A DNA stretch of 64,000 nt from the NCBI RefSeq assembly GCF_016432865.1, contig NC_067401.1, positions 467,232,001 through 467,296,000 on the forward strand, in the 5' to 3' direction. The notes under the pieces are model-generated. The model was not told the DNA's origin, made no database searches, and worked only from the letters and a program-made list of their open reading frames with translations. The DNA comes from Antechinus flavipes (taxonomy: Eukaryota). Position numbers and translations under genes: made by a program. Numbering within the stretch: the first letter of the stretch is position 1; each line of letters begins with the position of its first letter. This document shows, in pieces, positions 23,362-39,810 of the stretch.

Positions 23362-23500
23362 NNNNNNNNNNNNNNNNNNNNNNNNNNNNNNNNNNNNNNN
23401 NNNNNNNNNNNNNNNNNNNNNNNNNNNNNNNNNNNNNNNNNNNNNNNNNNNNNNNNNNNNNNNNNNNNNNNNNNNNNNNNNNNNNNNNNNNNNNNNNNNN
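23362..23500. other. Assembly gap (139 N)
   Basis: N run flanked by purine-rich low-complexity sequence. Confidence 1.
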
Positions 23501-29770: not shown

Positions 29771-30101
29771 GGGTTATAAAGGTCAAGATAATTACAAGAC
29801 AAAAAAAAATGAACTTTAGGCAAATTTTTCTGGAATATGGATGGTAGATGAAATTTATAAAAACAGGGAATATTAAATACAGCCTGATAAAGTCTGAACA
29901 AAACAGAATTAAAATCACTTTTTAATTGTACACAAGTCTAATGACCATTTACTTCTTCAAAACCTTACAGCCAGAAGGCTCTTGATTCCGATGACCAAGT
30001 TCTCAAGTTTGCTACAGAAACATAGAGTCCGATCAATCCAAATACCACGATTAAACTGATTGCTTGTTTTTGAACACACGAGACATGTAAAAAAGAAATA
30101 C

Positions 30102-30229
30102 CTAATCCTCCAGCATGAGCGTCAATAAGTGATGCAGCCACAGCAATCCCTGTAGGGAGGCCCAGTTCCTTCGCAGCCTCTGGGGTGAGACCTTGCCAAG
30201 AGAATCTCCGGGAGACAGCACTTGGGTTC
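30102..30229 (-). CDS. FGGY: Internal coding exon of FGGY carbohydrate kinase domain-containing protein (probably equivalent to human exon 7), with an apparent 1-nt frameshift
   Basis: Minus strand reads ...tgtctgtccAG|GA ACC CAA GTG CTG TCT CCC GGA GAT TCT CTT GGC AAG then GT CTC ACC CCA GAG GCT GCG AAG GAA CTG GGC CTC CCT ACA GGG ATT GCT GTG GCT GCA TCA CTT ATT GAC GCT CAT GCT GGA GGA TTA G|GTattt. This gives (G)[12 protein letters not shown] / [31 protein letters not shown], matching human FGGY as recalled ([44 protein letters not shown]). Phase-1 acceptor and donor are canonical. The two halves lie in different ORF-track frames (30102..30305 and 29965..30324). Confidence 0.92.
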
Positions 30230-30232
30230 CTG

Positions 30233-30256
30233 GACAGACAGACAGACAGACAGACA
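30233..30256. repeat. (GACA)6 microsatellite, i.e. (TGTC)6 on the FGGY sense strand directly before the acceptor
   Basis: Read directly from the sequence. Confidence 0.95.
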
Positions 30257-31514
30257 AGAAAATCCAAACCAAACAGAAGAACAAAAAACAGATATGAGTT
30301 GTCAAGATTTTTTTCCCCCCACAACAGTATTTCCCTCCTCCAAATTTATGTTAAATACAGAATTCTCTGCCTCGGTTTCCTTAATTGTAAAATGGGAATT
30401 ATAATGGTATCTCCCACCCAGATTTGTTGTGAAGATTAAATGGGATCAAGGAGTAGACGCTTTAATATATGCATCAGTTCTGGATTGAGGGTAAAAAGAA
30501 ACCTTAGAAGGTAATCCAGCCTTCCTCCTTGAGAAACAAGAATCCTACACCTGGAAAACGACTCGATCAAATTCTCACAGATAGTAAGCCACCAAGGAAG
30601 AGTGAGAGCTCCTTAGTCACCAGATTCTAGCTCTTCCCATTGGACCGTGATTCCTCTCAGCAGATCAGTGAAGTCTAGTTGCTTTTATTAAAGACTTAGG
30701 TGTGAGGGCCTCCCTATTTGAATATCAATCTTCAGAATACTTCTACAGGCCCAAAGGGCAGCTCAAACATATGGAAAATTCCATTCAGAGGAAACCCATA
30801 ATATGCTTAATGCAACTCATCCAGTTGTAAAAAAAAAAAAATAAAATAAAACATTTCTGAGACTGATGTTAAATAAATATTCCTTTAAACTCACACATCC
30901 ACACAAACAATACTCTTCCTGAGGGGAATATATTTGTAGTGATAGGGAACTGGAGGAAGTCCACTTTGGGAATCACTTCCTGCCAAAGGAAAAAGGGTCT
31001 AGTTGTTCCCCCATAACACAATTACAAAAAGGGGCTTTCTCAGAATGAAAAGAAAAGCTCTCTTAAATCTGTGGGCTAATAACCAAGTCATCAGAACGCT
31101 CCGATGAGTCAGGAGTTACCATACTGAATGCTTTCCTATGGAGTCTGGACTATGTTAACAACTGTTCAGTTTGAAGGCTCTACCCTTGATCTTGGTTGGT
31201 GGTACAACCTTACAGGGGAGGAAAAGGTTATACACGTGAAATAATATGATACAGGTTAGAACTCATCAATCAACATTTTCCCCTATATGAGAAGTTCTAA
31301 GTAAAGACTATTTATTTTGTACCTCTCTCCCCTGAAATGAGTACGTTTTATACCAATGTCTATTGATGAAACATCAGATAATTAATAGGCAATATGGAGC
31401 TTTGATATCTGTGAATAATAGAATCATCTTTTTGAACTGAAAGATCTTTCAAAGGTTTTCTATTTTAATCTTTTATTTTTATAAATAAGAGGAATTTTGT
31501 ACAGAGAAGTTGCC

Positions 31515-38191: not shown

Positions 38192-38324
38192 NNNNNNNNN
38201 NNNNNNNNNNNNNNNNNNNNNNNNNNNNNNNNNNNNNNNNNNNNNNNNNNNNNNNNNNNNNNNNNNNNNNNNNNNNNNNNNNNNNNNNNNNNNNNNNNNN
38301 NNNNNNNNNNNNNNNNNNNNNNNN
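38192..38324. other. Assembly gap (133 N)
   Basis: N run. Confidence 1.
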
Positions 38325-39655: not shown

Positions 39656-39810
39656 NNNNNNNNNNNNNNNNNNNNNNNNNNNNNNNNNNNNNNNNNNNNN
39701 NNNNNNNNNNNNNNNNNNNNNNNNNNNNNNNNNNNNNNNNNNNNNNNNNNNNNNNNNNNNNNNNNNNNNNNNNNNNNNNNNNNNNNNNNNNNNNNNNNNN
39801 NNNNNNNNNN
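39656..39810. other. Assembly gap (155 N)
   Basis: N run. Confidence 1.

What the first reader, a model, noticed from the sequence alone, without database searches (positions are those of the whole stretch)
30102..30229. Apparent 1-nt frameshift in a conserved FGGY (D-ribulokinase) exon: gene loss or assembly error
Seen in sequence: the exon is 128 nt between phase-1 splice sites, which cannot preserve the frame. The FGGY-like peptide switches frame at GGC AAG | GT CTC ACC (30194-30190), where one base is missing from an expected AAG GGT. Read through, the shifted frame ([29 protein letters not shown]) stops at a TAG formed by the last three exon bases (30104-30102), which predicts NMD. Established: FGGY is a D-ribulose kinase (metabolite-repair role), and the IDAHAG motif here is conserved in the family. 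Inference: because the residues and splice sites are otherwise well conserved, this is either a recent or polymorphic null allele in a marsupial, or a consensus indel error in a short homopolymer.
Basis: partly seen in the sequence, partly recalled or inferred. Interest (0 to 1): 0.8.

Follow-up and report, generated by a model that had tools for sequence, protein, structure and literature searches.

The report
One-base gap in FGGY exon
One exon of the sugar-kinase gene FGGY in this marsupial assembly lacks a single G and so reads as broken; this is more likely a base-calling slip in the assembly than a real gene loss, but the read-level test could not be run.

Summary
Window 30229..30102 (minus strand) is a 128-nt exon with an intact CAG acceptor and GT donor. 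It encodes the FGGY (D-ribulokinase) segment that is residues 224-267 of the Tasmanian devil protein. Eleven annotated marsupial orthologues read GTQV(L/V)SPGD(S/P)LGKGLTPEAA...IDAHAGGLG. The window reads the same except for one G missing from the AAG-GGT run (30194-30190) and one substitution (A250T). Read through, the frame runs into a TAG at 30104-30102. That removes the catalytic DAHAGG motif and the whole FGGY_C domain.

I could not decide whether the lesion is real. No other tool served DNA of related marsupials, because the gene spans about 480 kb. This window holds no other FGGY exon.

My leaning is a consensus indel error, at about 0.6. The exon is otherwise pristine and strongly constrained across marsupials. 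The scan's own notes, which are unchecked, list many similar one-base frameshifts in intact conserved genes of this genome. A real recent or polymorphic null allele stays at about 0.3. Interest is low unless reads confirm the deletion.

The parts
30102..30229 (-). FGGY coding exon, 128 nt where 129 are expected. It encodes the equivalent of devil FGGY residues 224-267, the end of the FGGY_N domain, including the DAHAGG motif.
30230..30231 (-). Canonical 3' splice site AG (CAG|G), preceded by a (TGTC)n pyrimidine-rich tract with 75% pyrimidines at -23..-4.
30100..30101 (-). Canonical 5' splice site GT (TAG|GTATTT).
30190..30194 (-). Lesion site. The sequence reads AAGGT where all orthologues require Lys-Gly (AAG GGN), so one G of the run is missing.
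30102..30104 (-). TAG stop reached in the shifted frame; it is the last three bases of the exon.
30192..30193 (-). Cryptic AG inside the exon. If it were used as an acceptor, the exon would be 90 nt and in frame, losing 13 residues. This is speculative and nothing shows it is used.
   Evidence: sequence arithmetic only

Best explanation
The exon is the genuine, functional FGGY (D-ribulokinase) exon of a dasyuromorph-like marsupial. The missing G in the GGG run (AAGGGT written as AAGGT) is a consensus indel error of this assembly. The animal itself would then have a 129-nt exon and an intact 552-aa kinase. What is shown: the exon's identity, the position of the missing base, and its consequences if it were real. 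What is inferred: that the base is missing only from the assembly.
For: 1) The lesion is the only defect in the exon. The acceptor, the donor and 42 of 43 codons match devil, dunnart and bilby FGGY.
2) FGGY is annotated as a full-length protein with this exon intact in 11 marsupial species. They span Didelphimorphia, Microbiotheria, Dasyuromorphia, Peramelemorphia and Diprotodontia. The gene is therefore under long-standing purifying selection in the clade.
3) The deletion sits in a short homopolymer, which is a typical place for consensus indel errors.
4) A lead, not evidence: the scan's unchecked notes on this same genome list many one-base frameshifts in otherwise intact conserved genes. 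These include PIAS3, CRYBG1, ACP7, TTC31, AAK1, omega-globin, an NLRP and a BTN2A-like gene. One note places all frameshifts of a region in a gap-bounded segment at homopolymers. That density is far above what real loss-of-function variation gives. From my own knowledge, a person carries on the order of 100 loss-of-function variants per genome.
5) The exon lies in a 14.7-kb stretch bounded by N runs at 23362-23500 and 38192-38324. If those runs are true gaps, this is a small contig.
Against: No read or independent assembly was seen, so nothing directly shows AAGGGT in this species. A three-base G run is short for a classic homopolymer error. Slippage in such runs is also the usual origin of real one-base deletions. 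FGGY is dispensable in cultured human cells: HAP1 knockouts were viable with normal alpha-dystroglycan glycosylation (PMC4873967). A real null allele would therefore be tolerable. The scan notes are unchecked AI readings.
Confidence: 0.6

Rival explanations
1. The one-base deletion is a real germline allele. It is either heterozygous or polymorphic in the sequenced animal, or recently fixed in its species. It gives a null FGGY allele: a premature stop at the exon end, then NMD or a protein of about 266 residues lacking the catalytic Asp and the FGGY_C domain.
For: The sequence as given carries the lesion. FGGY loss is tolerated in human HAP1 cells. One lineage-specific substitution (A250T) in an otherwise invariant marsupial exon is compatible with slightly relaxed constraint, though a single change proves nothing.
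Against: Apart from the missing base, the exon shows no other sign of decay. Splice sites are intact, there is no second lesion, and 42 of 43 residues are conserved. Any real lesion must therefore be very young. All other marsupials examined keep the gene. The prior that a given gene carries a real frameshift in one individual is below 1% (my own knowledge). An indel-prone consensus, which the scan notes hint at, gives a several-fold higher prior for error.
Confidence: 0.32
2. The deletion is real, but the transcript is rescued by the cryptic acceptor AG at 30193-30192. That would yield an in-frame 90-nt exon and a kinase lacking 13 residues, equivalent to devil residues 225-237.
For: This rests on sequence arithmetic only. 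G|GT CTC ACC restores Gly-Leu-Thr in phase 1. The 23 bases upstream have 65% pyrimidines, against 75% for the canonical site.
Against: The strong canonical CAG acceptor lies 38 nt upstream and would be preferred. The cryptic site is an AAG with purines at -4 to -6. The deleted residues are invariant in marsupials. In FGGY kinases they lie just before the helix-strand-Asp catalytic segment (inference from family knowledge). There are no RNA data.
Confidence: 0.04
3. The exon belongs to a non-functional duplicated fragment of FGGY and not to the functional locus.
For: Only one FGGY exon is found in 64 kb. Petaurus carries two FGGY-like loci.
Against: One exon per 64 kb is what the native gene predicts: it spans about 480 kb in the devil. 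The splice sites are intact and the sequence is nearly identical to orthologues. Nothing indicates a duplication.
Confidence: 0.04

Closest known systems
Sarcophilus harrisii FGGY carbohydrate kinase domain-containing protein (XP_003767350.1; P0219, 552 aa), and the Sminthopsis crassicaudata and Macrotis lagotis orthologues
   Same: The exon peptide [43 protein letters not shown] is identical at 42 of 43 positions. The protein has FGGY_N at 11-267 and FGGY_C at 289-496. The gene spans about 480 kb on a chromosome of about 465-479 Mb. This fits a window that holds a single exon and lies more than 426 Mb into its piece.
   Different: The orthologues have Gly237 intact and Ala250. The window lacks one base of the Gly237 codon and has Thr at position 250.
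Human FGGY (D-ribulokinase)
   Same: It is the same family and has the same motif. Recombinant FGGY has strong ribulokinase and weak ribitol kinase activity. Knockout in HAP1 cells is tolerated (PMC4873967).
   Different: Placental sequences read ...PPGASLG(N/S)GLTPEAA.... No activity data exist for any marsupial enzyme.
Yersinia pseudotuberculosis FGGY-family kinase, PDB 3GG4 / 3L0Q
   Same: It is the closest solved structure. It aligns over residues 10-549 of the devil orthologue at E 6.5e-178.
   Different: It is bacterial. I did not use it to model the truncated or shortened product.
Consensus indel errors that break conserved genes in draft vertebrate assemblies (the class that annotation pipelines flag as low-quality proteins; own knowledge)
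   Same: There is a single one-base indel in a homopolymer. The exon is otherwise pristine and relatives are intact.
   Different: This was not demonstrated here: no reads were seen.

Membership tests
FGGY carbohydrate kinase family (vertebrate FGGY / D-ribulokinase orthologue) | Significant sequence similarity to FGGY orthologues across the exon | tested here: met
   phmmer E 2.7e-9 for 30 aa in 1.84 billion proteins. tblastn E about 1e-13. 42 of 43 residues identical to devil, dunnart and bilby.
FGGY carbohydrate kinase family (vertebrate FGGY / D-ribulokinase orthologue) | Pfam FGGY_N / FGGY_C domain match | tested here: inconclusive
   The 30-aa piece alone gives no Pfam family, because it is too short. 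The orthologous devil protein has FGGY_N at 11-267 and FGGY_C at 289-496, which places this exon at the end of FGGY_N.
FGGY carbohydrate kinase family (vertebrate FGGY / D-ribulokinase orthologue) | Conserved (L/I)IDAHAGG motif carrying the catalytic Asp | tested here: met
   The motif is present in frame b. It is conserved from bacteria-like ribulokinases to vertebrates.
FGGY carbohydrate kinase family (vertebrate FGGY / D-ribulokinase orthologue) | Uninterrupted reading frame across the exon | tested here: not met
   The exon is 128 nt between phase-1 borders, with a frame switch at 30194-30190 and a TAG at 30104-30102. This holds for the assembly as written. The state in the animal is unknown.
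FGGY carbohydrate kinase family (vertebrate FGGY / D-ribulokinase orthologue) | Ribulokinase activity | not testable with these tools
   This needs an enzyme assay.
Assembly consensus indel error | Raw reads or independent assemblies of the same species disagree with the consensus at the site | not tested
Runs X1-X8 that hold the locus are known.
Unitary pseudogene / lineage-specific gene loss | Lesion confirmed in reads and shared by conspecifics or sister species | not tested
   Same reason. No DNA of relatives could be obtained.
Unitary pseudogene / lineage-specific gene loss | Several independent lesions or relaxed constraint along the gene | tested here: inconclusive
   Within this exon there is a single lesion and one amino-acid change. 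The window holds no other FGGY exon.

The most novel reading that the evidence does not exclude
The one-base deletion is real and fixed in this dasyuromorph species. That would make it a natural knockout of D-ribulokinase in a clade where every other examined marsupial keeps the gene. It would also be young enough that the exon shows no other decay.
Probability: 0.1. Interest if true: 0.45.

Novelty: not a real feature. Interest (0 to 1): 0.2.

Why it matters
If the deletion is real, it would be a natural loss-of-function allele of a metabolite-handling kinase whose physiological role in mammals is still thin. FGGY has ribulokinase activity and weak ribitol kinase activity, and it is dispensable in HAP1 cells (PMC4873967). 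The allele would be a candidate for studying what D-ribulose phosphorylation is needed for in a whole animal. If it is an assembly error, as I think more likely, the value is practical. Together with the many similar notes on this genome, it warns that single-base frameshifts in this assembly should not be read as gene losses without read support.

Tried and rejected
I did not call again. The Rfam scans were split at 30416 and 30453, and the protein and DNA queries lay at or below 30324.

2) I used the window's 119-aa ORF (29968-30324) as bait for exon-level gene calls on related marsupial contigs. It found only birds, reptiles and placentals, plus one Monodelphis fragment. There was no close relative and no copy of the window's own ORF.

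3) A search with the Monodelphis fragment found no further short marsupial entries.

4) A region-scored search with a bird FGGY protein reached marsupial full-length proteins. The dunnart isoform is not on record.

5) Only 15 of the 30 members of the marsupial protein cluster are listed, and a second look-up gave the same 15. I therefore could not see whether the window's own species has an annotated or flagged FGGY protein.

6) Two exact-pattern scans of metagenome contigs for host contamination were blank.

7) The Pfam scan of the 30-aa piece found no family.

8) I launched the large representative search in parallel with the family scan, not after it. The family scan then left the piece open.

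9) I considered estimating the assembly's indel error rate from repeat copies in the window and rejected the idea. Natural indel divergence between copies swamps any plausible error rate.

10) I looked at the flanks of the three N runs for splice signals or FGGY remnants and found none. I did not fill the runs or look them up.

Full report
**The sequence**

On the minus strand the window reads ...tgtctgtctgtccAG|GAACCCAAGTGCTG...GCTGGAGGATTAG|GTatttc. The acceptor AG is at 30231-30230. The exon runs 30229..30102 and is 128 nt long. The donor GT is at 30101-30100.

- The frame that starts at 30227 gives [12 protein letters not shown] and then [29 protein letters not shown]. The stop is the TAG at 30104-30102.
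- The frame that starts at 30228 gives twelve meaningless residues and then [30 protein letters not shown] from 30192.
- No tandem repeat lies at the site.

**It is a real FGGY exon**

- The 30-residue second half alone finds 39 proteins at E <= 0.001 among 1.84 billion representatives. The best are at E 2.7e-9 and 97% identity.
- Those proteins are exon-sized or full-length vertebrate FGGY sequences.
- tblastn of five of them against the window hits only this exon, at E about 1e-13. The first half is recovered in the neighbouring frame, with a gap exactly at the Lys-Gly junction.
- Every homologue reads G-(K/N/S)-G-L-T-P-E-A-A, so one base of a Gly codon is missing.
- A Pfam scan of the 30-aa piece alone is blank because the piece is too short.

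**Marsupial orthologues**

A region-scored search reached annotated marsupial proteins. Their cluster lists name Sarcophilus, Sminthopsis, Macrotis, Phascolarctos, Vombatus, Petaurus, Notamacropus, Trichosurus, Dromiciops, Gracilinanus and Monodelphis.

- In all those where I located the motif, the exon reads GTQV(L/V)(S/F)PGD(S/P)LGKGLTPEAA(K/R)ELGLP(A/S)[17 protein letters not shown]. My pattern did not pick out the segment in Gracilinanus.
- Devil, dunnart and bilby are identical to the window at 42 of 43 positions. The only difference besides the missing base is Ala250 to Thr.
- The DSLGK variant, together with the scan's statement that this genome has 7 pieces and a piece longer than 426 Mb, points to a marsupial with 2n = 14, probably a dasyuromorph. 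It is not the devil or the fat-tailed dunnart as annotated.
- I did not try to uncode the species.

**Consequence if the lesion is real**

In the devil protein FGGY_N spans 11-267 and FGGY_C spans 289-496. The shift at Gly237 replaces the last 30 residues of FGGY_N, including Asp260 of the DAHAGG motif, and stops at the exon end. Many exons lie downstream, so NMD or a dead truncated protein is expected. This is inference from the standard NMD rule.

Skipping the 128-nt exon would also shift the frame. A cryptic AG at 30193-30192 would give an in-frame 90-nt exon lacking 13 invariant residues. It sits behind a weaker pyrimidine tract, and a strong canonical site lies 38 nt upstream. I treat this as unlikely.

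**Real or artefact**

This is the question that matters, and I could not answer it directly.

- The look-up of sequencing runs listed 20 holders. The best are organism A (X1 at 0.74, X2 at 0.55), organism B (X3 to X5 at 0.42-0.55), C, D and E. All are kept as contigs and none is on record as RNA.
- I respected the cap. From then on I kept those places out of every search.
- ORF-level bait found no close relatives.
The dunnart isoform is not on record.
- Two metagenome scans were blank.
- The window contains no other FGGY exon, so further lesions could not be sought.
- N runs at 23362-23500, 38192-38324 and 39656-39810 were left alone. Their flanks show no splice signals or FGGY remnants.

**Weighing the two readings**

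For an artefact:
- The exon is otherwise pristine.
- The gene is kept intact in eleven marsupials across five orders.
- The lesion sits in a homopolymer.
- As a lead only, the scan's unchecked notes on this same genome list many one-base frameshifts in otherwise intact conserved genes. They include PIAS3, CRYBG1, ACP7, TTC31, AAK1, omega-globin, an NLRP and a BTN2A-like gene. One note ties frameshifts to a gap-bounded segment and to homopolymers.
- From my own knowledge, real individuals carry far fewer frameshifts per coding base than that density suggests. This raises the prior for consensus errors.

For a real allele:
- The sequence is what it is.
- Short-run slippage is also how real deletions arise.
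- FGGY knockouts are tolerated in human HAP1 cells, where CDP-ribitol and alpha-dystroglycan glycosylation were unchanged (PMC4873967).

I put the odds at about 0.6 for an assembly error, 0.32 for a real young or polymorphic null, and small remainders for cryptic-splice rescue and for a duplicated fragment.

**Comparison with what is known**

The exon belongs to the vertebrate FGGY / D-ribulokinase orthologue group. The closest solved structure is the Yersinia pseudotuberculosis FGGY kinase 3GG4/3L0Q, at E 6.5e-178 to the devil orthologue. My one paper search, which was about FGGY function rather than gene loss, turned up no report of an FGGY loss.

**Surroundings**

The surroundings hold no Rfam family on either strand.

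**Verdict**

The interpretation, written as an either/or, is upheld but unresolved. It is most likely not a real biological feature, and interest is low pending the read test described under next steps.

Noticed in passing
window 23362-23500, 38192-38324, 39656-39810: There are three N runs of 139, 133 and 155 bases, which are exon-like sizes. The FGGY exon lies in the 14.7-kb stretch between the first two. The flanks show no splice signals or FGGY remnants, and the first run sits in CT-rich low-complexity sequence.
   Followed up: partly
P0040 (a 963-bp public contig, bird-like sequence): This is a single-contig ORF from another vertebrate. It shows the same kind of frame switch just upstream of GLTPEAA (PRKPRLVSWRVCWKGLTPEAA, against PGNHVLSPGESIGKGLTPEAA in its relatives). 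It shows that one-base shifts in this exon also turn up in unpolished public contigs.
   Followed up: no
window 30250-30266 (minus strand, just upstream of the acceptor): The polypyrimidine tract of the canonical acceptor is a (TGTC)n microsatellite-like run. Tandem Repeats Finder did not score it at the default threshold.
   Followed up: no
cluster of P0219: Petaurus breviceps carries FGGY-like proteins on two different contigs (35.9 Mb and 32.5 Mb) with parallel isoform sets. This could be a duplicated locus or two haplotype scaffolds.
   Followed up: no
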